Assembly (NCBI GenBank): GCA_951406725.2
Contig: OX597834.1
Location: forward strand, 4,898,001-4,962,000
Reading direction: 5' to 3'
From: Octopus vulgaris
Taxonomy: Eukaryota
DNA: 64,000 nucleotides
This document shows positions 2,362-63,470 of this stretch, piece after piece. How positions within the stretch are numbered: the stretch's first letter is position 1; each line of letters opens with the position of its first letter. The notes below the pieces were generated by a model that had not been told where the DNA came from, ran no database searches, and saw only the letters and a list, made by a program, of their open reading frames with translations. The position numbers and the translations under genes were made by a program.

Positions 2362-3489
2362 GTTAGGTGAAAAGGTTTTTTAAAAATGAGAAAGGGGAAA
2401 AAAAGTTTGACAAATGCCAAACTTCACACACCACATCCACCCCCAGCAGTAAAAAAATGTGCACGCCCAAACTGTGGGACATGCCCCCTACTACTTGAAG
2501 GTTCTGAATTTACCTTCAAACAAGTTACGAAGTTTAAAATCAAGACTAACTTCTCCTGTTCCTCCGAGAACCTTATCTACGTTCTCACATGCGCTGGTTG
2601 CCAACATAATTATGTTGGACAAACGAGTCTCCGTTACGTAAACGAGTAGTGGGGCATAAAGAACAAATAAATCTCCCGGAATACCGACAAATTCCACTGA
2701 GTGACCACATAGACTCATGCGCTAAAGACTTAAACCCCAAATTCTATATATTCCCCTTCTACCAATGTAAAGACGGCATCACCACACAGGAGAGAATTAA
2801 CAAGGAGAATCTCTTTATTGAAAAAATTCCAAACACAACTTAATATACAAACTCCTCGTTGATCAAACTTCCCTTTTCTACCTCATTCTTCATGGATGGA
2901 CTCACACAAATATATAAGGATACCATAGATTCATCACTTCAAGCAAAAACTTATATTCTTTAAATATCATTTTTACTATTGTTGTTATTTCCATCATCTT
3001 TATTATTTATGATATAACAATCTGAAATGCAATTGTCTATGCAAATTTATATAATTAGAAAATAATATAAACAAAGTGTTAAAATCTGAAAGTTAAATTC
3101 ACAAACAAGTACATAAAAAAGATAATGCAAATGAAGCTAAAATGACAATTTTATGATTTGGGGTTTTATCAGCAGCCTTTATTGAAGAACTCAAAAGAAT
3201 TGTCTCCCCTTATTCACAACACAGGAACTGAAGAACCACAATTACTACCACTTCCTGTTTTGCCAACATCCTAAATTAAACCAAACAACACATGGTCTTA
3301 ATCCCATTGGATCCTAATACCTCAAGGTAATTTTTTCGTGAACATTCATTAAACTCATGATACACAACGAACTCACAATGTATCGGAGTACTTATTTTTA
3401 ATTTTTATACATATTTATTATTATTCTTTTGCAAAAAACAATGCAACTTTTTTCCCCTTTCTCATTTTTAAAAAACCTTTTCACCTAAC

Positions 3490-10962: not shown

Positions 10963-12696
10963 AAGATCAACAACCTGATCTCAACACACCACAACTCACT
11001 TACGGATAATGAAAAAGACTACATCACCAATTTCGAACCAAAACCCAGAAACTTCTACGGTCTACCAAAAATACACAAATCAAAAAATATTCAACAGGCA
11101 GTAAAAGAACAAGAAAGTGAGTACATAAAATTATTACATCCAAAAGACCTAAAACTTAGACCTATTATAGCTGGTCCAGCATGCCCTACACACCGTCTAA
11201 GCAATTTTATTGACATTGTTTTGAAACCACTATGTACTTACATACCAAGTTTCATCAGGGATGACATCGACTTCCTGTCCCATCTTCCCAAAACAACAGA
11301 AACAAATTCAGTTTTACTAAGTTTTGATGTGGTAAGCCTCTACACCAATATTCCACACGATTTAGGAATAAAGGCGATTAAATACTGGTTAGTAAAACAT
11401 AGAGAAGTAATTCCCAGCAGATTCACAGTGCCATTTATATTAGACACAGTCAAACTTATTCTAGAAAATAACACCTTCTTCTTCAATGGAAAGAATTACA
11501 TCCAAATTAGAGGCACGGCGATGGGAACGAGGTTTGCTCCCGTTTACGCCAACTCTGTAATGGGATACTTAGAACAACAACTCTACCAAGAGGTGGAGGT
11601 AAACTATGGCACTGGATTTAGAAAATATATTGAAAAGGCATGGAAGAGATACCTAGACGACTGCTTCATAATCTGGACAGAATCTCTAAATACTCTGGAA
11701 GAGTTCAATATCCTCCTGAACAACCTACACCCATCTCTCCAATTTACAAAGGAGATGAGTAGTACCAAATTACCATTCCTGGATATAATGGTAATTAAAA
11801 AAGACACCACCATCACCACAGATATATACTATAAACACACAGACACACATCAATACCTAAATGTTAAGTCGTGCCATCCACCACATACAAAACGTAACAT
11901 CCCATACTGCCTAGCCAGAAGAATTTGTACCATTGTAGAAGATGTAAATATCAGGAACAAACGCCTAATAGAACTAAAAGAATTTTTGCTGAAACAAAAA
12001 TACCCATCTCTACTTATAGAAAATGGCATACAGCGGGCTATAAAAATACCCATACAACAACTTAGGACAACCCAAGGAAGAGGAAAACAAGAACAAGTCA
12101 TACCATTCATAGTGACACACAACCCATGTCACCAGAATATCTTCAACATTGCCAAAGCAAACCTACCAATCATTGCCCAAAGTAATGAATTAAAAGACAT
12201 AATCACGGATCGAGCTATGGTGCTTAGTAAAAGACAGCCTAAAAACTTGAAAACATTACTAACAAAGGCAAAATTTGACCTCAGCAACAAAGACCAAACA
12301 TTCACGGTATCTAAATGCAATGATAGCCGATGTGGCACATGCCAATTCATACATACCGGTCAATATATAAACACAAAAACCGGGAAAATATTCACAAACG
12401 CGAATATGAACTGCAAAAGCAGAAATTTAATTTACTGCATCAAATGCCCAAATTGTGATGAAATATATGTAGGTCAGACGGGAAACGCACTATTAGAACG
12501 CTCACGTGTACACCGGCAACAGATTAGAGACCCAGAGGTCCGTCAGATACCTTTGAGTAACCACCTAGCAACATGTGGCCGGAAAATGTGTATAATATTT
12601 CCGTTCTACAAATTACACAGCCCAAGTGAAATCGAGAGGAGAATCAGAGAAAAGAATTTTATTGATAAATTCGAACCCAAGCTAAATAAGCAATAA
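10963..12696 (+). CDS. PLE reverse transcriptase + GIY-YIG endonuclease (frame open from ~10963; 10787-10978 precedes it across one frameshift)
   Basis: Supplied 491-aa ORF extends upstream in frame without a stop; catalytic YLDD and GIY-YIG motifs intact. Confidence 0.9.
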   Translation, partial: KINNLISTHHNSLTDNEKDYITNFEPKPRNFYGLPKIHKSKNIQQAVKEQESEYIKLLHPKDLKLRPIIAGPACPTHRLSNFIDIVLKPLCTYIPSFIRDDIDFLSHLPKTTETNSVLLSFDVVSLYTNIPHDLGIKAIKYWLVKHREVIPSRFTVPFILDTVKLILENNTFFFNGKNYIQIRGTAMGTRFAPVYANSVMGYLEQQLYQEVEVNYGTGFRKYIEKAWKRYLDDCFIIWTESLNTLEEFNILLNNLHPSLQFTKEMSSTKLPFLDIMVIKKDTTITTDIYYKHTDTHQYLNVKSCHPPHTKRNIPYCLARRICTIVEDVNIRNKRLIELKEFLLKQKYPSLLIENGIQRAIKIPIQQLRTTQGRGKQEQVIPFIVTHNPCHQNIFNIAKANLPIIAQSNELKDIITDRAMVLSKRQPKNLKTLLTKAKFDLSNKDQTFTVSKCNDSRCGTCQFIHTGQYINTKTGKIFTNANMNCKSRNLIYCIKCPNCDEIYVGQTGNALLERSRVHRQQIRDPEVRQIPLSNHLATCGRKMCIIFPFYKLHSPSEIERRIREKNFIDKFEPKLNKQ

Positions 12697-14215: not shown

Positions 14216-15590
14216 TGACCCTTAGCTGTATCGTATGTATCAGGGTCAGATTTGCACGAAAGAATTTTTTCCTTTTTTACTAAGGCATATTTCCGTCAGA
14301 GCGAGTGTCTGTTTAAAGTAGCGGCCGTGGTGGAATTTTGCTTCTCCTTTTCGGAGGACTTATCTTTTGTTTTAGTATTCCTGGCCCAGGGTGTTTAAAC
14401 TTGGTCTAAATTTTTTTATGAAATATAGTTCTTTATTTTGGCGTTGTGTGAAGGTTGCGTTGTCACTGAATTTATAAAGCGGGTTAGTTGTAAATTTCGG
14501 ATTTACATTTCCAGCACATCTATCTATGTGTCCGCTGACTGGTATTTTGCGGTAATCAGGGTTTCTAATTTGTGATTTATGCACCGCCATCCTGTTACGT
14601 AAGCCAATTTTTGTATGGCCTATATACTGCCTATTGCAGCCTGCGCATGTTATGACGTAAATTAAGTTTTCTGATGCGCAGGTGAAGTTTGTTCTAATGG
14701 TGAACTGGTGGCCTTATTCCAGTATAAATTCTGATCCTTCTTTCAAGATGACACAGATTCCGCAGTTGGGCCTTCCGCATTTTCTAACTGCTGGTTTTGT
14801 GGTTGATGTTGAGTGCAGTGTAGCTTGGGTTAAAATCCTTTTCAAGGATTTTGGTTGCCGTTTACTTTTAATGATGGTGTGTGTTTCGAGGATCCGGTTC
14901 ATCTTTGGGTCTCCCTTTAGTAGGGCTGTGCTTTGTAGTATGGTGTTGAAGGCCTCATTGTTGAGTGGGTTGTGTGTAGAGATGTAGGGAAGGGTTTTTA
15001 ATTGTTCTTTCTTTTTTGGTTTTGTTTGTCTCAGGTCTTCTATACTTAATTTAAGTACCCGTTGGATTGCACTGTCTATTAGGGGCTGTGGATAGTTTCT
15101 ATTTGTGAGTGTGGTTCTAAGTAACTGGAGACGTGTGTGTCGGGTGTTTGTGTCTGATATTATGGTGCAAATCCTTCTAGCTAAACAAAAAGGGACATTC
15201 ATTCTAGTGTGTCGTGGGTGGCATGAATCAAAGGGTAGGTACTGTTTAGTCTGTCGGTTTATAGTAGATATCTGTCTCTATTTTGTTGCCGGTTTTCTTA
15301 ATGAGGATGTCTAAAAATGGTAATTCTTTTTCGTTGTGGTCCATCGTGAATTGTATATTGTCATTTATTCCATTTAATAGTATTTTAAATTCCTCAAGTT
15401 TCTCTATACATTTGTCCCAGATGATGAAACAGTCATCGAGGTATCTTTTCCAGTTGTTATGGATATAGGTGGCGAAGGTGTTTCCATATTTCTCGAGTGT
15501 CATCCGGTATAGTATTTTCTCGAGGTATCCCATCACTAGGTTGGCAAAAGATGGTGCAGTACGCGTGCCCATCGCTGTTCCCGATCTTTG

Positions 15591-17379: not shown

Positions 17380-17717
17380 TTCTCAAATAAATAATTGTGT
17401 ATCATTTAGAAACACCTGTGTTCTTAAATATAAACTTATCATGCGCGTGCATACACACACGCAGAAACACACACAAAAATACACACGTACCGCGCACACA
17501 CACAAGCACACACATAAAAACACACACAAATATATATATGTGTATGTATGTATACATATATATATATACATATATATATATGTGTATGTATATATGTGCA
17601 TATGTATATTTATATACATATATATTTTTATATGTATATATATATTTATATATATGTATGCAAGTATATATGTACATATATATATATATATATATATGTG
17701 TGTATGTATAGATGTGC

Positions 17718-17751
<34 letters not shown>

Positions 17752-17893
17752 CATACATGTATACACACACATACATATATACATGTATATGCACGCATAC
17801 ATAGGTATATACACGTATAGACGTATATGTAAATATATCTATATGCATATGTTTATGTTCACATACAAACACATATATATATGCGTGTATTGT

Positions 17894-17940
<47 letters not shown>

Positions 17941-18000
17941 GCGTGTGTGTGTATGTGTATATAGAGGAACACACACACAAAGCCACACATATTTATACGG
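17380..18000. repeat. Complex TA/CA/TG low-complexity tract
   Basis: Direct reading. Confidence 0.9.
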
Positions 18001-18406
18001 CAGAGACAGGCATCATCACGGTAATCAGTTTATGTACATTGGGAATGCGATTGTTTGGTAACCTGCCAATTTGTGTGCGAGGAGATAAATTAACCAGTGG
18101 TGTGCACTCGGTTTTCTCTGACAGCTGGACTTGTCTTCTTGCATACTAAGTGGAATACCTATTAAGTCGAACAAATGTGTAGAAAAGTGTGAAGTTTGTA
18201 GGCACCGCTTCAACACATTTAAGAATTCATTTACCTCAGATGTCTGATGTATTATGAATATAAGTCTAATTCATATGTATGCTCACCCAACGTTTCCTAG
18301 AACCGCTATTCATATACATTCATATGTGTATATGTCCGAGTGTGTGTTTGTGTGTGTGTCTGTGTGTATACATATATATATACTTATATGAACGTATGTA
18401 CATCTG

Positions 18407-18460
<54 letters not shown>

Positions 18461-18530
18461 TATATATATATATGTATATATTTATGTATATATGTATATA
18501 TATATGTATATATTTATGTATATATGTATG

Positions 18531-18572
<42 letters not shown>

Positions 18573-18760
18573 AAGCAGCTGTACACACATTCATATAAGT
18601 GCATATATATATGCAGAGATATATGTTTGTACATATCTACCTACCTACATACATACATACACACGCACACATATATGTATGTATGTATGTATGTAGGTAG
18701 GTCGGTATATACAAATATATTTACATATATTGTTGTCGTTATTATTACTATATTGCTAAA

Positions 18761-18915
18761 GGTAGCGAACTGGCAAAATCGTTAGCTCGCCGGGCGATGA
18801 GTTTAAGGATATTTCGCTTGTCTTTACGTTCCGAGATCGAATTCCACCGATGTTGACTTTTCTTTTCATCCTTTCGGGGTGGACTAGATAAGTACCAGTT
18901 ACGGACTGGGGTCTA
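18761..18915 (+). mobile_element. SINE family B, degenerate
   Basis: GGTAGCGAACTGGCAAAATCGTTAGC...GTTGACTTTTCTTTTCATCCTTTCGGGG. Confidence 0.75.
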
Positions 18916-19107: not shown

Positions 19108-23180
<4,073 letters not shown>

Positions 23181-23823: not shown

Positions 23824-24085
23824 ATAAATATTAGGGAATAAATCCAAATTTACAGGGAAAAATCAGATTTAGGATTGAATCCAATTTTATAGTAAAATAT
23901 AATATAATATTAATTAGAGACAAAACCACTATTATGCAAATCAAACAAAGAAAGACTTAATCCAATACATAAAAAATTTTATATAAATTAAATAAAATTA
24001 AGTTATCCACTACAATTGTTTCCTGTCACTTCTAAGGACATTCATCAGGTGGTTTCTAGACCTTCTATTCAATTTTAAATTAAAT
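23821..24085 (-). mobile_element. Solo PLE pseudo-LTR with hammerhead, between (TA)n tracts
   Basis: Carries the motif at 24007-24052; AT-rich tail; TA-repeat flanks. Confidence 0.65.
24007..24052 (-). ncRNA. Type-I hammerhead motif, canonical CUGAUGA core
   Basis: Reverse complement CCAC-CTGATGA-A-TGTC-CTTAGAAGT-GACA-G-GAAA-CAATTG-T-A-GTGG; ACAATTGT palindrome, GUA triplet. Confidence 0.85.
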
Positions 24086-24403
24086 ATATGTATATATATA
24101 TATATATATTTTTTATATATATATATATATTTTATATATATATATATATAATTAGAGGTTGTGTAAACCTCATGAAGGAATGGTTTCTTCCGAGTAAATA
24201 CTGGTTCAATAACTAGTATTTTGGTGGAACAAACCTCCTTAAAATAATAGGTATATATAAAAACATACAGTTTATATTCCTTTAAAAGAAGAAAAGAAAA
24301 TAGATTAGGAATATAACAATTGTTTATTACTAACAGCAAATTGGTCATCTTCCTTTACAGCCGTTTCAATTAATTTAGCAGACATAAATGAATCTCTCTC
24401 TCA

Positions 24404-24649: not shown

Positions 24650-24907
24650 ACATATAAATAAATTAGAAGGTTTGGAGATGATGTACAGGTATTTTATATT
24701 AGTAGAAATGAGGTACTCAGAAAATCGGATGATTTTATATTTACAGATATTTATTTGTATATTACATGTTTTTATACATCATATATCATATATCATATAT
24801 GGTATATTAGCGCTTTTCTCCATTCTAGTGGAGTTTTCAAATTGAACTAAGTTTTTGTGGAAAACTTTGACCATTTTTATAGTGTTATTGAGTGTGTAGT
24901 TATGGGG

Positions 24908-24945
<38 letters not shown>

Positions 24946-25006
24946 TTATATATGTGTAAAAGTATATACATGAGAGTATACAAATATACATACACCTCCA
25001 CACACG

Positions 25007-25039
<33 letters not shown>

Positions 25040-25220
25040 CATGGTTTTATATATATATACACAGATACATATACACACACACAACCGCGTATATACATAA
25101 GGGAAACGAAAAGGTTGAGATACATATGCAAATGTATATATGGATTTGTATAATTTTTATAAATATATATATACTTCTATATATGTGTGTGTATGTGTGT
25201 GTTCGTGCGGGAGTGTGTGT

Positions 25221-25283
<63 letters not shown>

Positions 25284-26111
25284 CGATGCAGACACACAGA
25301 CAGGTACACACACATATACAAATTTTTATATATATGCACGTGTGCCAGATCTCTGCTGATAAGTATCACTAGATGTCAGTCATCACCTAAAACAAATACA
25401 TTTTCCCGAAGATCCGTTCTAAATTCTAGCATTTTCTTAAGTAAGCAATACCCTAACTACCCTTTAGAAATTTTGCAGTTAGCTATCATCATTTATTTTT
25501 GTGAATAAAAGTAAATCATCCAGCATTTTATTCATTCAGATAGACATTGTATGTATGTCTATATGGCTGAGCAAATAAGATGCGGCTAATTCTATCACTT
25601 CAAACTATAAAATATTAAAGCGATTTTCACTCTGCCGAAGTGTTGGTTCGAGAGCAATTAAATATCATAAAGTATTTCATTACTTTGTTTTAATACAGTC
25701 ATTCATGTACCGTGTGTTGTAAAATCACGATTAGCAACAAATACAAAATTGTCATCTTGTTCATAAATATGTAGATATTCTACCCATTCCGCACGTTGGC
25801 ACTGCCGGAAAGCTTCGCAAGGAGCCTTCTGCATGGCATATCTACATATAATTGTGAATTAAAATATTTTATATACTAAGATTAAGACTAAATGATATTT
25901 CGTCCACTGCAGTTGTAAGGAAAATCTATAAGATTTTTGAATAAGAAACTCATTTATGTTAATGCCCACATATGTAGACATGCAGCAGAACGCTTGCGTG
26001 CGAAATCTTCCCAGACGCTTTTCATGGATTGCTTACAGATTGGCATAGGCGTGAATCGCTAGACCCTCTAAGAAAATGCTTACCAACATTATTATATATA
26101 TACATACATAC

Positions 26112-33068: not shown

Positions 33069-34042
33069 ATATAAATATATATGTGTGTTTGTGTGTAGCA
33101 ACGTCAACAGACCACCTTATTCTCTGTCACGATCTGATTTCGTCTCTTGACTGGTATATATTGCCAAACTGCCACATTTTCCTATAGTTTGGCGCTAAGA
33201 CAGAAATTCATTCTGGCATACTGGAAATAGCATTGTTTGTTGGTGTGCGATGAAATCTTTTATAAACATGGGAAGAATCGGGGATAAATATGAAGATATG
33301 TGCATTTATATTTAGCACATTCTTGCACACAACAACCTGGTAGAGAAATATGGGTCCATCGCCTTTTTCTGCAAAACACAGAGCCAAACTGTAAGTCATG
33401 TTTCGGCGTTGTTTTGACTCTTCACGGTACATGTTTGCATATTTATTTGTGATAGTATGTATGGGTGTATGTTCAGAAACTTCGCTTCTTAAAAGCCTAA
33501 TTAAAATACATTTGCATAACTAATAATTTTTTTAGAAAATTGAGTGAATGATGTGCTATGTGAACCGATCTGTCATTTGTAGTATTTTTAATGAAATATA
33601 TTCGGAGCATAAATGTTGCCTGTGTCCATTTACATGTATGCGAGGTTCTTTGCGTACGAAGCGTTTTAGCTTAATTATTCATAAGGACTGTACCAGAAAA
33701 AAATGAAAATAAAGTTGCAAGGAATTTAATTAACTAAACGCTATAATACTAAAGCTTGATTGCCGACAGGAAGCTGATTACATAGTAAATAATTAAGCAC
33801 AAAGCATTTAAAAGGAAATTCATTAACAAAGAAAAGAAATGAGAAAACAAGAATGGGCATTTTATCACTTTATTGAACACTCCAGACGGGTCCGACACGT
33901 CATCAAAATTTTGCATAAGGGATACACAGCTACTTGGACGATATTTATACTGCACACACGCACACACGCACATACACACAAATATATATATATATCTACA
34001 CATATATAGTTATATGTATATATATATATACATCTATATGTA

Positions 34043-34139
<97 letters not shown>

Positions 34140-34188
34140 ATATGTGTGTATGTATGAATATATGTATATAAATATGTGTAAGTATACA

Positions 34189-34251
<63 letters not shown>

Positions 34252-34266
34252 ATACATATACATATA

Positions 34267-34490
34267 CTCTTTTTATTCTTTTCTTTTGCCTGTTGCAGCC
34301 ATTTGACTGAGGTCATGCAGAAGCACTGCCTTTAGTCGAACAAATCGACTCCAGGGCTTATTTTTGTAAGCTTAGTACTTATTCTATTGGTCTCTTAGCC
34401 CGAACCGCTATGTTACGGGGTCGTAAACTCACTAACATCGGTTTTCAAGCGATGATGGGGTCAAACATAGACACTCAAACACACACGCGC
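34267..34490 (-). mobile_element. SINE family A, 3' half
   Basis: CATTTGACTGAGGTCATGCAGAAGCACTGCCTTTAGTCG...GAACCGCTATGTTACGGGG. Confidence 0.8.
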
Positions 34491-35653: not shown

Positions 35654-36530
35654 AGCACACACATAAATATCTACACACACGTATATCTATACCTACAAGC
35701 ATACACACATATAAGTCTGCACATGTACACACCCATATGTATAAGTATAAATATCATTATGCATATGAATATATGAATAAATGCTTACAAATGGGGATTC
35801 AGTTATTTGGGGAGCAATCCGCTAGGGACGACTTGTAGAATAAATAAATTTAAGGTTAATTGCAATTATAGAGAAACGAAAAGTGTTCAGGCAAGGATAG
35901 AGATTGAGATTGAAGGAAAATAATAAGCATATGTATTATTATAAATGTATAAATTTATAAAGTTAATTGCAATTACAGAAAAATAGTATTCAGGTTAGGA
36001 TAGAGATGAAAGGAATGTAATTGTATATGGGGTAGTTTGCCAAAAGAGTTATAGGAATACACCTGCATGTATAAATATCAATAAGTATATGAGTATACAC
36101 TCACAAATAAATGCGTAGAAATATATGGAGTAATACCCTGGGGAGGACTGGTGTAATAAACCTATATGGTATTTAAAATAAAGTTACATTACACATATAG
36201 GGGGATTAGAAAAATGTACAATAGATAGTGCCAAGACTAGGAGAATGGATTAAGGAGAGGACGAATGTAATATTATCTGTGGTAATTTGAGATAGTAATT
36301 ATAGAGGTATAATGCAGACAATAATTCTTACGGGTTGATACGATTGCAATTCAGAAAATAAGATTATGGAATATGTGACTAGAGACAAATAAATGGGATA
36401 GATTTAGATGTTCTAGAGAATATTTAATCGGGCAAAGAGGAATACCCATTGTTAATGTACACATATCAGACAGGTATTCAATGCAGTAGATTGCGATTAT
36501 GATGATAAAAGCTAAAAAAAGAAATAACAT

Positions 36531-36912
36531 ATTGTGAAGTACATTTTTCAGTTAAATGTGGCTAATCTCCTAAGGGTGGATGCTACTGTAGCTTATAGCC
36601 CCAGGAGGACACCTCCTCCGGCTGGCTATTGACACACTTTCTGTGCCCTATCAGTATTTGCAAAGGGAAGCCATCCTTCCCGTCTTCAACCTATGATTGT
36701 CACACGCTGATGACGGGTCAATCCTCAGAAACTCGAGTCCGTGTGTATCATAGGTTGGAGACGGGAAGGATGGCTTCCCTTTGCAAATACTGATAGGGCA
36801 CAGAAAGTGTGTCAATAGCTAGCTGGAGGAGGTGTCCTCCTGTGGCTACAAGCTACAGTAGCATCCACCCTTAAGGGTTAGCCACATTTAAGTGGCAAAT
36901 ATACTTCACAAT
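36531..36912 (+). mobile_element. ~380-bp foldback element with a hammerhead at the apex (probably PLE-derived)
   Basis: 36531-36706 is an imperfect inverted repeat of 36740-36912; the spacer is the ribozyme core. Confidence 0.8.
36701..36745 (+). ncRNA. Type-I hammerhead motif, canonical core, GUC triplet
   Basis: CACACG-CTGATGA-CGGGTCAATCCTCA-GAAA-CTCGAG-T-C-CGTGTG; predicted cleavage between 36739 and 36740. Confidence 0.85.
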
Positions 36913-37126
36913 GTCGTGCAGCTACTGTTTATGCCTCGCTCAGACATTTATTATTGCTTAGAAATAACATATTTTTTTACAAAAACTCAAATAACAAATT
37001 CATGTTTCTATGTCACATTTCCTGATATTACCAAGGGAGAGAAAAGTATACTCCCATAAATACTCGTCACATGACGAATAACAAGTCAAGTGCGTTTGTA
37101 ATTCATTTATTAAATATTATTTCAAA

Positions 37127-37164
<38 letters not shown>

Positions 37165-37294
37165 GCGTGTGCAGAAGAGTGCTCTCACGTGGCTAAGAGT
37201 TGTTTTGACTCTTATTTCTAGCAATGCTGGTGGCGACTAGCAACCTCAGTCACTTTAATGACCACTATACTTGTTGCCTTTCGGTTGTAAATTA

Positions 37295-37355
<61 letters not shown>

Positions 37356-37439
37356 GGAGGAGAGAGAGAGAGAGAGAAAGCGATATAGGTGGATAGATAT
37401 TAAGACAGAGTGTGCTTCTCTTTCGGATTTATGATTTAC

Positions 37440-37519
<80 letters not shown>

Positions 37520-38612: not shown

Positions 38613-38869
38613 GTTGTTGTTGTTTTTACGTACTATTTTTGTATTCATATTCGTGTAACATCGTCCGTTTTTCTGTCTTTGTTTTGTATACATTCGAAGC
38701 TTTCTTCTAAGGAATCTAATGCGCTTAGCTTAGTTTCTCCTTGGTGCTGGCCAGATTGGAGCAATCTCAAGATTAATCAGCCGAAATTGCGAGGATGATC
38801 CGGTTCTTGACTGAAGATTTAAAATGTTTTGCGTTCTTGTCCCAGTTTGTATTTTTATACATACATACA

Positions 38870-38959
<90 letters not shown>

Positions 38960-38960
<1 letters not shown>

Positions 38961-39283
38961 TATACTTAAGGCTATCTAAGAGATGCCACCATGCAAGAGA
39001 TGACCAGGAAATTAATCATCTACTCTATATGGATGATCTAAAAATATTTGACAAAAACGGCAAAGAATTAGAAGAGCTCCTGAATATTCTCAAAGAATTC
39101 AGCTTTGATATAGGTATGGAATTCGGACTTGATAAATGTGCAAAGGTTACTTTCAAGGCAGAAAACATAGAACTTGATACGACCACAACTATTCGAAATG
39201 TAAACTAATCCGAAGTATACAAATATCTGGGAACTAATGAAGGTGATGGTATCCAGCACTCAAAACTGAAAAAGAAAATCCGC

Positions 39284-57246: not shown

Positions 57247-57259
57247 CTTGCTGGACGGA

Positions 57260-57465
57260 AAGTTAATCCAAACATGAAAACACAAAGAGAAAACACAATA
57301 ATGCGAGGACGTGGAACAAGCATAGTGTTATTGGACGCTCAGGAAGTAAAGTAAGAAGGAGGATTTAAAGTTTCGAGCGGAACTCTTCGTCAGAAACATA
57401 GGTAAAGGAAAGATCCAAGGAAGGGAAGACGGACGAAAAAATCGCCAACGATACACACGCGGTCA
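57260..57465 (-). mobile_element. Solo PLE pseudo-LTR family P2 with decayed hammerhead at 57363-57397
   Basis: Reverse complement of 63263-63470; GTTT-CTGACGA-A-GAGT-TCC-GCTC-GAAA-CT-T-T-AAAT. Confidence 0.75.
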
Positions 57466-57492
57466 TATATATATGTGTGTGTGTGTGTGTGT

Positions 57493-61691: not shown

Positions 61692-63262
61692 CTGAAGGGG
61701 AGAGAGAGTTCGAGACTGGGGGAATGGGACAGAGCGAGTGAGGAATTGTATGCGTGCAATGTAACATTTTAAGACAATCTTTGGCTGGTTTACTTTCTTA
61801 TTGCTTACTACTCATTTACTTGCATTTTTCTTTTGTTTATAGTTTTGAATTTTAAAATCTTTGCCTAATTTATGAAATCTTTAATTAATTATCGAGCAAT
61901 TAATTATGGATTAATAAAAATTTGCTTTCTCGAGCTCATTATTAGCTATTTACATAATTAAAATTGCTTTTTTTTTTCATTCTTTCTACTATATATATTT
62001 TTTTGTGAAATAGTAAATGATTCGTATAAGAATGGAAATAATTAAGATATAAAACATGAAAACGAACAAAAATAAACATTTACAATTACGAAATAAAAAA
62101 GCTCTCGTATTTACAGTTAACACAAGAACAAGTAGATTGTACATAAAGTTAACACGAAACAAAATAAAAGGAAAATATAGCTGTGTTGCAACAAAACAGA
62201 TTAAAGTAAAAAATTAAGTCCCGGATGTTTAGTTATTGTTTGAAATGAAAATATATCTGAAAAAGAGACCTAAGGTAAAAACAAAAGAACATTATGCATT
62301 TTTCTCTTCCTTTTTTTTCCATTTAGTGCTAAATAAAACAAAAGCAAATATTTATTTTGAATTATTAAGTTACATCCTGAGGTTATAGAAAGAATTGGTA
62401 TTTCCAGTATGTTCTTCTTATAACTGTCACAATTGTGTACGAAAATAAGTGGCACCACTAATACTGTCGCACCTACAAAAAAAAATCAAATATTTTCGTA
62501 AGTATTGACAAAAATTTGGCGTACAGTTGATTCCATAGAGTGCCGCTCAAAATAGCTTATAAAATAACTTAGGATATCAGTTCAATTCTGTAAGGCGTTG
62601 ATATTCATTTCACTTTCACTTTCCCCCTGTTCATCAAACAAAGCCTGGTTAGGGGTTGTTTGTTTCCGGATCGACTTTCATTAAATAGAAACGACCAAAT
62701 CCCTTCAGATTTCTTCAATGACCCTGTTTTGTGGAGGGTGAAGAGTGGTACAGCCTTTAGAACGCAATATCTAGTGCCAGCTCCTTTTATATTACAGTGG
62801 AGAGAGACTTCAGAAGAATTAGATTGCTTGTCGCAACAGGTCGTTAAATATGCAGTGATCTGGGTCCTTCCTTTGTAATCGAATCTTCATAGAATCCACA
62901 TTTTCAGAAATGAATCAAATCAAAGTTTGCACTTTTTGCCAAATGTAGGCATTATTGTTCTATGGCAATCAAGTAAATATTGTAGGATATTTTTTTACAT
63001 TCACCTATAAGATATTGTTAGTAAATATAAAAGTACTTTAAATTCTTCTTAATTTCAAGTTCTCTATTTTCCAGAAGCCTGGCTTCTGAATTTATTCCCA
63101 CCCATCCGTACGTTTTGTTGTGATGTCCATGTCTAGATAGTACCATTTCAGTGCAAGCTAGAGAGTTAAGAAGTAACATTTTCTTGCCACTCGCAATGCA
63201 GAAATGAAATTTTCTTCCCTTATAATGGTGAAACATATCCGTTGTAATCCTTATATAAAATG

Positions 63263-63470
63263 TGACCGCGTGTGTACCGTTGGCGATTTTTTTCCTCCGT
63301 CTTTCCTTCCCTAGATCTTTCCTTTTCCTATGTTTCTGATGAAGGGCTCCGCTCGAAACGTTAAACCCTCCTTCTTCCCTTCCTTCCTGAGCGTCCAATA
63401 ATACTATATTTGTTCCACATCCTCGCGCTGTTGTGTTTTCTCTTTGTGTTTTCATGTTTGGATTAACTTT
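63263..63470 (+). mobile_element. Solo PLE pseudo-LTR family P2
   Basis: Homologous to 57260-57465; ends in (TA)n. Confidence 0.75.
63332..63366 (+). ncRNA. Minimal type-I hammerhead motif (35 nt)
   Basis: GTTT-CTGATGA-A-GGGC-TCC-GCTC-GAAA-CG-T-T-AAAC. Confidence 0.8.

What the first reader, a model, noticed from the sequence alone, without database searches (positions are those of the whole stretch)
36531..36912. Hammerhead ribozyme sitting exactly at the tip of a ~175-bp foldback
Seen: a canonical type-I hammerhead (CUGAUGA, GAAA, GUC triplet, ACTCGAGT palindrome) whose 6-bp stem I (CACACG/CGTGTG) continues, after a small bulge, into ~170 bp of imperfect inverted repeat. The whole unit folds as one rod capped by the ribozyme. 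There is no ORF and no obvious TSD. Known: PLEs carry hammerheads in pseudo-LTRs and often have inverted 5' segments. Inference: either the inversion junction was set by the ribozyme-cleaved RNA end (cDNA ending in CACACG switching template through stem I), or this is a distinct non-autonomous ribozyme-capped hairpin retroelement whose cleavage would release a long dsRNA. I do not know of this architecture being described.
Basis: partly seen in the sequence, partly recalled or inferred. Interest (0 to 1): 0.85.

Follow-up and report, generated by a model that had tools for sequence, protein, structure and literature searches.

The report
Penelope-type hammerhead insertion folded head-to-head
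The hairpin capped by a ribozyme is real, but it is most likely one old, dead insertion of a Penelope-type retroelement fragment laid down as two inverted copies, an arrangement already described for these elements, rather than a new kind of element.

Summary
Window 36531-36912 is a 173-bp-per-arm inverted repeat (about 93% complementary). It brackets the foldback plus a 47-nt extension present on the right arm only.

The hammerhead is not "canonical". Rfam does not detect it, helix III can form only in a dimer, and helix II is closed by a C·A mismatch. It does match the Penelope-like-element (PLE) type, which I found in about 40 natural copies in metagenome contigs and in mollusc PLEs related to the window's own PLE.

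An inverted 5'-truncated copy lying head-to-head, a tail at one end only, a variable TSD and an AT-rich target are published hallmarks of PLE insertions. Independent metagenome loci show the same head-to-head structure with variable junctions.

The best explanation is a single PLE-mobilised insertion primed from both nicked target strands, now decayed (arms 6.6% diverged). Recurrence, and the idea that ribozyme cleavage set the junction, therefore remain untested. Interest is modest.

The parts
36520..36533 (.). Left copy of the 14-bp target-site duplication, AGAAATAACATATT. Its last 3 nt (ATT) also pair with AAT at 36910-36912.
   Evidence: D4, 100% identical; longest repeat in 2000 shuffles was 12 nt; reconstructed empty site is 25% GC
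36534..36697 (-). Inverted (antisense) 5'-truncated copy. It is the reverse complement of 36747-36909 and has no tail.
36698..36700 (+). Junction irregularity: UGU on the left faces a single U (36746) on the right. This is the probable join between the inverted and direct copies. Alternatively it is 'loop 1' or a later indel.
   Evidence: alignment; sequence
36701..36706 (+). Helix I, 5' strand (CACACG)
36707..36713 (+). Hammerhead core box C3-A9 (CUGAUGA)
36714..36727 (+). Helix II: C | GGG-UCAAUC-CUC | A. It has 3 bp and a C.A closing mismatch. This is the N-stem-N layout typical of PLE hammerheads.
36728..36739 (+). G12 A13 A14; A15.1-CUCGAG-U16.1 (an 8-nt palindrome, helix III only as a dimer); C17. 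Predicted cleavage is after 36739.
   Evidence: the 8-bp intermolecular duplex is -10.7 kcal/mol; a monomeric helix III is impossible
36740..36745 (+). Helix I, 3' strand (CGUGUG)
36746..36912 (+). Direct (sense) copy downstream of the cleavage site. This is the right arm of the foldback.
36913..36959 (+). 47-nt 3' extension present on one arm only. It is the candidate PLE 'tail', the segment between two reverse-transcription start sites.
   Evidence: no reverse complement of it lies upstream of the left arm; literature PMC8557442, PMC11167929
36960..36973 (.). Right copy of the 14-bp target-site duplication

Best explanation
This is a single, old, non-coding insertion of the 3'-terminal (pLTR-type) part of a hammerhead-bearing Penelope-like element, or of a short non-autonomous element that a PLE mobilised. 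It was laid down as two head-to-head copies during one integration event.

Shown by the sequence:
- A GC-rich unit (47%) sits in 27-29% GC, AT-rich DNA.
- It is bracketed by a perfect 14-bp TSD.
- It consists of an antisense copy, then a sense copy that carries the hammerhead, then a 47-nt tail on the sense copy only.

Inferred mechanism:
- The PLE endonuclease made staggered nicks 14 bp apart.
- The bottom-strand 3'-OH primed reverse transcription at the distal start site (36959). It copied through the hammerhead to just upstream of helix I.
- The top-strand 3'-OH (...CATATT-3') annealed to AAU (36910-12) at the proximal start site. It copied a second, antisense-oriented cDNA up to about the cleavage site.
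- Two same-sense cDNAs can pair only at self-complementary sequence. The DNA version of helix I (CACACG/CGTGTG) is therefore a natural place for the join. An end-to-end template jump is the alternative.

Since insertion the arms have diverged by 6.6%, so the copy is dead. The ribozyme here is a passenger of the direct copy, not a cap that evolved for a hairpin. As a lone PLE-type hammerhead it would need a partner to cleave at all.
For: - TSD and foreign composition.
- Arm alignment, junction and tail asymmetry.
- The TSD encloses both arms, so the inversion arose at insertion and not later.
- PLEs are present in the same window. An RT+GIY-YIG ORF lies at 11221-12696, with two further remnants. 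Three more PLE-type hammerheads are also present.
- The same N-stemII-N / palindromic helix III hammerhead occurs about 130 nt after the ORF stop of mollusc PLEs related to the window's PLE. It also occurs in about 40 metagenome copies.
- Independent metagenome loci show head-to-head copies with junctions at or near the hammerhead. L038 and L106/L036 are joined at C3. L114 has an inverted copy cut inside its hammerhead and a direct copy starting 9 nt upstream of the core. L104, L024 and L050 have junctions at -28, about -100 and -23/+112.
- L038 shows the same asymmetry as the window: tail on the direct copy only.
- Literature: an inverted 5'-truncated copy adjacent to the element and a 30-40 bp tail at one end (PMC8557442); inverted pLTR with TSD, tail and palindromes at the junction (PMC3846280); a PLE protein that cleaves and extends both strands, prefers 5'-ATT-3', and has two internal RT start sites that delimit the tail (PMC11167929).
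Against: - No single-arm copy of this particular family, and no parent PLE, could be found. The window blastn, the protein searches, two metagenome scans, two genome scans and one viral scan were all negative. 'One-off' therefore rests on analogy.
- The tail is 47 nt, against the 30-40 nt reported.
- No PLE coding sequence adjoins the unit.
Confidence: 0.68

Rival explanations
1. The unit is a genomic monomer of a propagating family whose RNA is natively a long rod capped by the hammerhead. This could be a non-LTR retrozyme or hairpin retroelement, perhaps copied once around a circular RNA starting at an RT site in the far loop.
For: - Metazoan non-LTR retrozymes are 170-400 nt, 'highly self-paired', carry type I hammerheads, have long TSDs when present, and derive from PLE pLTRs (PMC7229834; bioRxiv 10.64898/2026.07.22.740005). 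The unit is 426 nt.
- A 1-3 nt internal loop lies exactly 6 bp from the core, where loop 1 of type I hammerheads sits.
- An exact one-unit copy of a circle would also place both ends at one RT start site.
Against: - There is no tandem copy and no second hammerhead.
- There is no other copy in the window or in any collection searched.
- The pairing is far too perfect for a retrozyme or viroid-like rod: -0.745 kcal/nt, 87% paired, 96-bp uninterrupted helix. A real tandem hammerhead repeat (L006, 662-nt unit) gives -0.36 kcal/nt, 63% paired and an 11-bp longest helix.
- The arm differences look like neutral decay. There is no excess of G.U over C.A.
- None of about 70 natural hammerheads with the same helix III has complementary sequence on its two sides beyond about 40 nt.
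Confidence: 0.14
2. The unit is a foldback or MITE-type DNA transposon, or a post-insertion DNA-level inverted duplication or assembly artefact, and its loop resembles a hammerhead by chance.
For: Long terminal inverted repeats with a TSD are typical of MITEs and foldback elements. Rfam does not recognise the hammerhead.
Against: - The full descriptor (core boxes, helix I, helix II, palindromic helix III) is expected 0.027 times per window and never with a 6-bp helix I. It sits precisely on the symmetry axis.
- A 14-bp TSD and a 47-nt one-sided extension are atypical for cut-and-paste elements.
- The TSD encloses both arms, which argues against a later duplication.
- 6.6% arm divergence with an intact TSD argues against an assembly palindrome.
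Confidence: 0.05
3. Whatever its origin, the locus now functions as a hairpin-RNA gene, a source of endogenous siRNA or dsRNA. The hammerhead would open the loop.
For: A 173-bp near-perfect hairpin would be a Dicer or ADAR substrate if transcribed. The weak Rfam hits are all to miRNA hairpins (E=0.08-2, far below gathering score).
Against: - There is no evidence of transcription or conservation.
- The Rfam hits are generic hairpin matches.
- The mismatches show no strand-specific preservation of pairing.
- A lone PLE-type hammerhead is expected to be nearly inactive (PMC4209133).
Confidence: 0.08

Closest known systems
Penelope-like element insertions with an inverted pLTR (Arkhipova et al. 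2013, PMC3846280, e.g. Pen2a_Av; Craig et al. 2021, PMC8557442, Fig. 2)
   Same: Shared features are a head-to-head inverted 5'-truncated copy next to a direct copy, an extension ('tail') at one end only, a TSD of 8-10+ bp, an AT-rich or microsatellite target, a hammerhead in the pLTR, and a short palindrome or overlap at the inversion junction.
   Different: Here nothing lies between the copies: there is no ORF and no second direct pLTR. Only one of the two copies retains the hammerhead, so the ribozyme forms the hairpin loop. The tail is 47 nt rather than 30-40 nt. The parent PLE was not identified.
PLE-type minimal or dimeric hammerheads (Cervera & de la Pena 2014, PMC4209133; Lunse et al. 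2017, not readable here)
   Same: Shared features are the CUGAUGA...GAAA...UH core, a type I topology, a very short helix III with a palindromic loop that requires dimerisation, and an extra nucleotide between A9 and helix II. That paper reports 'dual HHRs 100-700 bp apart on opposite strands'.
   Different: The published consensus has G10.1-C11.1. Here, and in the natural copies I retrieved, one unpaired nucleotide flanks helix II on each side: U..U in 12 of 15 distinct motifs, C..A here. A single CpG-to-CpA change at 36727 could also explain the mismatch.
Metazoan non-LTR retrozymes (Cervera & de la Pena 2020, PMC7229834)
   Same: Both are short, non-coding, hammerhead-bearing units related to PLE pLTRs that fold into self-paired RNA. 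The size is similar (mussel units are 350-390 bp).
   Different: Retrozymes are tandem arrays with one hammerhead per unit and viroid-like imperfect pairing. This is a solitary unit with a DNA-level 93% inverted repeat.
L1 'twin priming' 5' inversions (Ostertag & Kazazian 2001; from my own knowledge, not checked here)
   Same: The second nicked target strand primes reverse transcription, which gives an inverted segment inside one TSD-flanked insertion.
   Different: In L1 the inverted piece is a different, upstream part of the RNA, so there is no duplication. Here both cDNAs start at the same 3' region, which produces a foldback.

Membership tests
Hammerhead ribozyme (type I) | Conserved core: C3 U4 G5 A6 N7 G8 A9 ... 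G12 A13 A14 ... A15.1/U16.1 ... H17 | tested here: met
   CUGAUGA is at 36707-13, GAA at 36728-30, A15.1 at 36731, U16.1 at 36738 and C17 at 36739.
Hammerhead ribozyme (type I) | Helix I formed by the flanks, open end at helix I | tested here: met
   6 bp, CACACG/CGUGUG. Any inverted repeat abutting the core would create this helix, so it is weak independent evidence.
Hammerhead ribozyme (type I) | Helix II closed by a Watson-Crick 10.1-11.1 pair (usually G-C) | tested here: not met
   The closing position is C.A around a 3-bp stem (G-C, G.U, G-C). The same N-stem-N layout recurs in 15 distinct natural motifs with covarying stems: CGC/GCG, CGUCU/AGACG, UGUU/AACA, UGUC/GACA.
Hammerhead ribozyme (type I) | Match to a curated covariance model (Rfam hammerhead families) | tested here: not met
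   No hit at gathering score or at E<=10 on a 651-nt slice. PLE-type hammerheads are known to lack a modelled helix III.
Hammerhead ribozyme (type I) | Self-cleavage after H17 | not testable with these tools
   This needs in vitro transcription of monomer and dimer constructs.
Penelope-like element insertion (5'-truncated, head-to-head) | Hammerhead with short palindromic helix III in the terminal repeat | tested here: met
   ACUCGAGU palindrome. The same type occurs about 130 nt after the ORF stop of related mollusc PLEs.
Penelope-like element insertion (5'-truncated, head-to-head) | Adjacent inverted 5'-truncated copy inside the same TSD | tested here: met
   The TSD encloses both arms.
Penelope-like element insertion (5'-truncated, head-to-head) | Short 3' extension (tail) at one end only | tested here: met
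   47 nt at 36913-36959, with no counterpart on the left arm. This is longer than the published 30-40 bp.
Penelope-like element insertion (5'-truncated, head-to-head) | Sequence identity to the pLTR or 5' ORF region of an RT+GIY-YIG element | tested here: inconclusive
   No similarity to the window's three PLE remnants or to any searchable collection. The source genome is not available.
Non-LTR retrozyme | Tandem repeats, each unit with one hammerhead | tested here: not met
   There is a single hammerhead and no tandem array.
Non-LTR retrozyme | Expressed as circular RNA | not testable with these tools
   No transcriptome data are available.
MITE / foldback DNA transposon | Symmetric terminal inverted repeats with a short TSD of fixed length | tested here: not met
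   The TSD is 14 bp and the ends are asymmetric, with a 47-nt extension on one side.

The most novel reading that the evidence does not exclude
The inversion junction may not be random. Either the antisense cDNA ran off the 5' end that hammerhead cleavage created in vivo, or the two same-sense cDNAs annealed through the DNA image of helix I. Such foldbacks would then be genomic footprints showing that PLE hammerheads cleave, or at least fold, during retrotransposition. Direct RNA evidence for this is still lacking: PMC11167929 found no reads ending at the cleavage site. A survey of junction positions anchored on 3' tails would test it.
Probability: 0.2. Interest if true: 0.55.

Novelty: new member of a known kind. 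Interest (0 to 1): 0.3.

Why it matters
On its own this locus is a dead transposon fragment. Its value is as a very clean example of the PLE 'both strands primed' insertion product. The TSD, two different start sites 47 nt apart, a 3-nt ATT/AAU microhomology at the top-strand primer, and a junction hugging helix I can all be read from one 440-bp stretch. This agrees with the in vitro behaviour reported for the Anolis PLE. If many such junctions cluster at the cleavage site in the source genome, they would give the first in vivo footprint of PLE hammerhead activity. A practical point also follows. Foldbacks like this are a source of long hairpin RNA and of assembly breaks in PLE-rich invertebrate genomes.

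Tried and rejected
1. Rfam at gathering score and at E<=10 gave no hammerhead. It gave only sub-threshold miRNA/TLS hairpin matches, which I rejected as generic hairpin hits.
2. I looked for other copies of the arms. Window blastn found nothing. A 24-mer in metagenome contigs, a 20-mer and a 21-mer in GTDB genome contigs and the hammerhead pattern in viral contigs all returned zero.
3. I used the small ORFs across the tip as handles. The word-indexed protein search found no candidates. An exact look-up of 10 window ORFs found none in the collection. The full phmmer scan returned three hits, all to long internally repetitive sequences in which one 26-bit match is counted nine times. I rejected these as spurious.
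4. I tried to identify the organism through the PLE ORF. The best hits are at most 65% identical and are molluscs: Mytilus, Pinctada, Saccostrea, and host contamination in bivalve symbiont bins. The species itself is not in the databases.
5. The other three hammerheads in the window are not in foldbacks.
6. An attempt at an ascertainment-free distribution of 5' ends in the metagenome family failed. Nearly all copies in those loci had been selected through their hammerhead, and the subfamilies diverge just upstream of the core.
7. A ViennaRNA dimer fold does not return the double-hammerhead as the MFE structure. This is uninformative, because the core's tertiary contacts are not modelled.
8. 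There are no tRNA-like parts, so a tRNA-derived SINE is not indicated.
9. A literal search for the motif sequence in papers found nothing. Lunse et al. 2017 is not held.

Full report
**What is in the sequence**

Window 36531-36912 is a long inverted repeat. The repeat finder gives arms 36571-36697 / 36747-36873 at 96% complementarity and outer arms 36531-36565 / 36878-36912 at 89%. A gapped alignment joins them into 36531-36706 versus 36740-36912, with 11 substitutions (8 transitions, 3 transversions) and two small indels. As RNA the region folds at -322.8 kcal/mol, z = -32.6.

The 33 nt between the arms read CUGAUGA-C-GGGUCAAUCCUC-A-GAAA-CUCGAG-UC. They are closed by CACACG/CGUGUG.

A perfect 14-nt direct repeat, AGAAATAACATATT, lies at 36520-36533 and 36960-36973. 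In 2000 shuffles of the flanks the longest repeat was 12 nt. It brackets the foldback plus 47 further nucleotides (36913-36959) that follow the right arm only. No reverse complement of that stretch lies left of the left arm.

The unit 36534-36959 is 46.9% GC, and the 2 kb on either side are 27-29% GC. Joining the flanks gives a 25% GC empty site. This is therefore one TSD-flanked insertion, and both arms were created within that event.

**Is the ribozyme real?**

Rfam finds no hammerhead at gathering thresholds or at E<=10 on a 651-nt slice. The loose linear pattern alone is not rare, at 0.22 expected per window.

I wrote a descriptor requiring the core boxes, helix I >=4 bp, helix II >=3 bp and a palindromic helix III. 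It finds four motifs in the window against 0.027 expected in 300 dinucleotide shuffles, and none of the shuffle hits has a 6-bp helix I.

The motif departs from the textbook hammerhead in two ways. Helix III (A-U, C-G, U-A around a 2-nt loop) cannot form in a monomer. Helix II is 3 bp flanked by an unpaired C and A. Both traits are those of PLE hammerheads. Cervera & de la Pena (PMC4209133) describe short palindromic helices III that require dimers, and an extra nucleotide after A9.

A metagenome scan for CTGATGA-N10-20-GAAACTCGAGTH returned 120 loci. About 40 distinct copies form a natural family, ACAGU|CUGAUGA|U|CGC-UUCGU-GCG|U|GAAA|CUCGAG|UA|ACUGU, with exactly this N-stem-N layout.

Mollusc PLEs related to the window's own PLE ORF carry AUUCAC|CUGAAGA|U|CGUCU-AUG-AGACG|U|GAAA|GUAC|UA|GUGAAU about 130 nt after the stop codon. 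Across the distinct motifs helix II covaries (CGC/GCG, CGCUG/CAGCG, CGUCU/AGACG, UGUU/AACA, UGUC/GACA, GGG/CUC). The flanking pair is U..U in 12 of 15 and C..A here.

I therefore accept it as a PLE-type hammerhead, not a 'canonical' one. A single CpG-to-CpA change at 36727 could equally have destroyed a former C-G closing pair. Activity cannot be judged here. PLE hammerheads cleave poorly even as dimers (PMC4209133) and may need the PLE protein (PMC11167929).

**Context**

The window looks metazoan. It is 34% GC and packed with microsatellites. It contains an RT + GIY-YIG ORF (11221-12696), two more PLE remnants (2398-2825; 14393-15590 on the minus strand), a LINE (19578-21696) and three other PLE-type hammerheads.

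None of those three lies in a foldback. Two of them belong to a discrete 218-bp element family. The PLE ORF's best relatives are mollusc sequences at <=65% identity. The source is probably a mollusc that is not in the collections.

**What it most likely is**

The PLE literature describes exactly this insertion anatomy:
- Pen2a_Av has an inverted pLTR, a 31-bp tail on one of the inverted pLTRs, a 9-bp TSD, and palindromes at inverted junctions (PMC3846280).
- The purified Anolis PLE protein cleaves and extends both DNA strands, prefers 5'-ATT-3', and starts reverse transcription at two internal sites whose spacing is the tail (PMC11167929).

The window element fits point by point. The right arm ends at a distal site (36959). 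The left arm ends 47 nt 'earlier'. The left TSD copy ends in ATT, and those three bases are complementary to AAU 36910-12. This is what is expected if the top-strand 3' end primed on the RNA there.

**Analogues elsewhere**

I looked for palindromes centred near each hammerhead in the metagenome loci.
- L038 and L106/L036 are from different subfamilies, so they are independent events. Each is a head-to-head pair joined exactly at C3 (tcatcag-a-CTGATGA).
- L114 has an inverted copy truncated inside its own hammerhead, abutting a direct copy that starts 9 nt upstream of the core.
- L104 and L024 have junctions about 28 and about 100 nt upstream.
- L050 has only about 21 nt of inverted tail joined at -23.
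- In L038 the direct copy has the long 3' end and the inverted copy the short one, as in the window.
- Single-orientation copies of the same family exist (e.g. L050, L013). In that family the foldbacks are therefore products of individual insertions with variable junctions.
- L004 is a ~66-nt insertion (core plus 31 nt) with a 13-nt TSD.

By contrast, none of these natural hammerheads has flanks on its two sides that are complementary beyond about 40 nt. The window case is the extreme of the series: it has the longest arms and only one hammerhead retained.

**The retrozyme rival**

Metazoan non-LTR retrozymes are 170-400-nt, 'highly self-paired' hammerhead units related to PLE pLTRs (PMC7229834; bioRxiv 10.64898/2026.07.22.740005). 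An exact one-unit copy of a circular RNA could in principle give this structure. I consider it unlikely for four reasons:
- There is no tandem repeat and no second hammerhead.
- The pairing is DNA-grade: 87% paired, -0.745 kcal/nt and a 96-bp uninterrupted helix. A real tandem hammerhead repeat from the scan (L006) gives 63%, -0.36 kcal/nt and 11 bp.
- The arm differences show no bias toward G.U (5 G.U versus 3 C.A on the + strand).
- No other copy was found anywhere.

It cannot be excluded without the source genome.

**Did cleavage set the junction?**

Two decompositions fit the sequence.
- D1: the inverted copy runs to the cleavage site (CACACG = reverse complement of 36740-45) and the direct copy starts at C3, as in L038 and L106. 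Helix I is then a by-product, and the UGU/U irregularity is a later indel.
- D2: the inverted copy stops at 36747, and the direct copy starts at 36698-36701 with a native helix I.

Only two indels exist in 173 nt. One lying exactly at the end of a 6-bp helix I by chance has a probability of roughly 3%, which favours D2. In that case the antisense cDNA ended 7 nt short of the cleavage site.

In either decomposition both ends lie within 10 nt of helix I. This is expected if two same-sense cDNAs can anneal only at self-complementary sequence. It is also partly ascertainment, because the locus was flagged for having kept its ribozyme. I rate the 'footprint of cleavage' reading at about 0.2.

**Verdict**

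The locus is a new member of a known kind, and the interest is modest.

Noticed in passing
window 63253-63470 (+) and 57259-57474 (-): These are two copies (89% identical over 216 nt) of a discrete ~218-bp element. Each carries a minimal PLE-type hammerhead (GUUU|CUGAUGA|A|GGGC..|GAAA|CG|UU|AAAC). They share the same 5' and 3' ends, and both abut microsatellites. This looks like a short non-autonomous (solo-pLTR / SINE-like) hammerhead family.
   Followed up: partly
window 24011-24048 (-), fragment ~23830-24090: This is a fourth hammerhead: CCAC|CUGAUGA|A|UGUC..GACA|G|GAAA|CAAUUG|UA|GUGG. It has a 6-nt palindromic helix III and an A..G pair flanking helix II. It is a solo 5'-truncated fragment lying between two (TA)n tracts and running about 200 nt past the cleavage site.
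   Followed up: partly
window 11221-12696 (+), 14393-15590 (-), 2398-2825 (+): There are three Penelope-like element coding remnants. The first is an intact 491-aa RT + GIY-YIG ORF with a Cx4CxxC linker. The first two converge tail-to-tail. No hammerhead was detected in their 3' flanks with my descriptors. The best database relatives are mollusc PLEs at <=65% identity.
   Followed up: partly
window 19578-21696 (-) and 38795-39280 (+): There is a LINE-type reverse transcriptase (RVT_1 + zf-RVT) split over three ORFs, and a second 47%-identical RT fragment 2 kb downstream of the foldback.
   Followed up: no
L038 4307-4452; L106 1050-1200 (same locus as L036): Metagenome contigs carry two hammerhead copies joined head-to-head exactly at the first core base (tcatcag-a-CTGATGA), in two different subfamilies. 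The recurrence of this exact junction is unexplained, because it is not the cleavage site.
   Followed up: partly
L006 (contig Ga0049110_10014201), hammerheads 662 nt apart on one strand: This is a tandem repeat with a fully canonical type I hammerhead (CUGAUGA-GGCC-CGAUA-GGCC-GAAA-CUCGAG-UC), probably a non-LTR retrozyme. I used it here only as a folding control.
   Followed up: partly
L004 344-409: This is a ~66-nt insertion consisting only of a hammerhead core plus 31 nt, flanked by a 13-nt TSD (AACAGCTACTATA). It is a very small PLE-type retrocopy.
   Followed up: no
whole window, e.g. 17400-18800, 24900-25500, 33900-34300, 37129-37519: The density of (TA)n, (CA)n, (AG)n and related microsatellites is very high. 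Many of the long 'ORFs' are simply translated microsatellites.
   Followed up: no
P0121 (3212 aa, protein representative library): This is a 'protein' with a ~304-aa internal period, evidently a translated tandem DNA repeat. It gave an inflated E-value (8e-13) against the 55-aa tip ORF because one weak match was counted nine times.
   Followed up: yes
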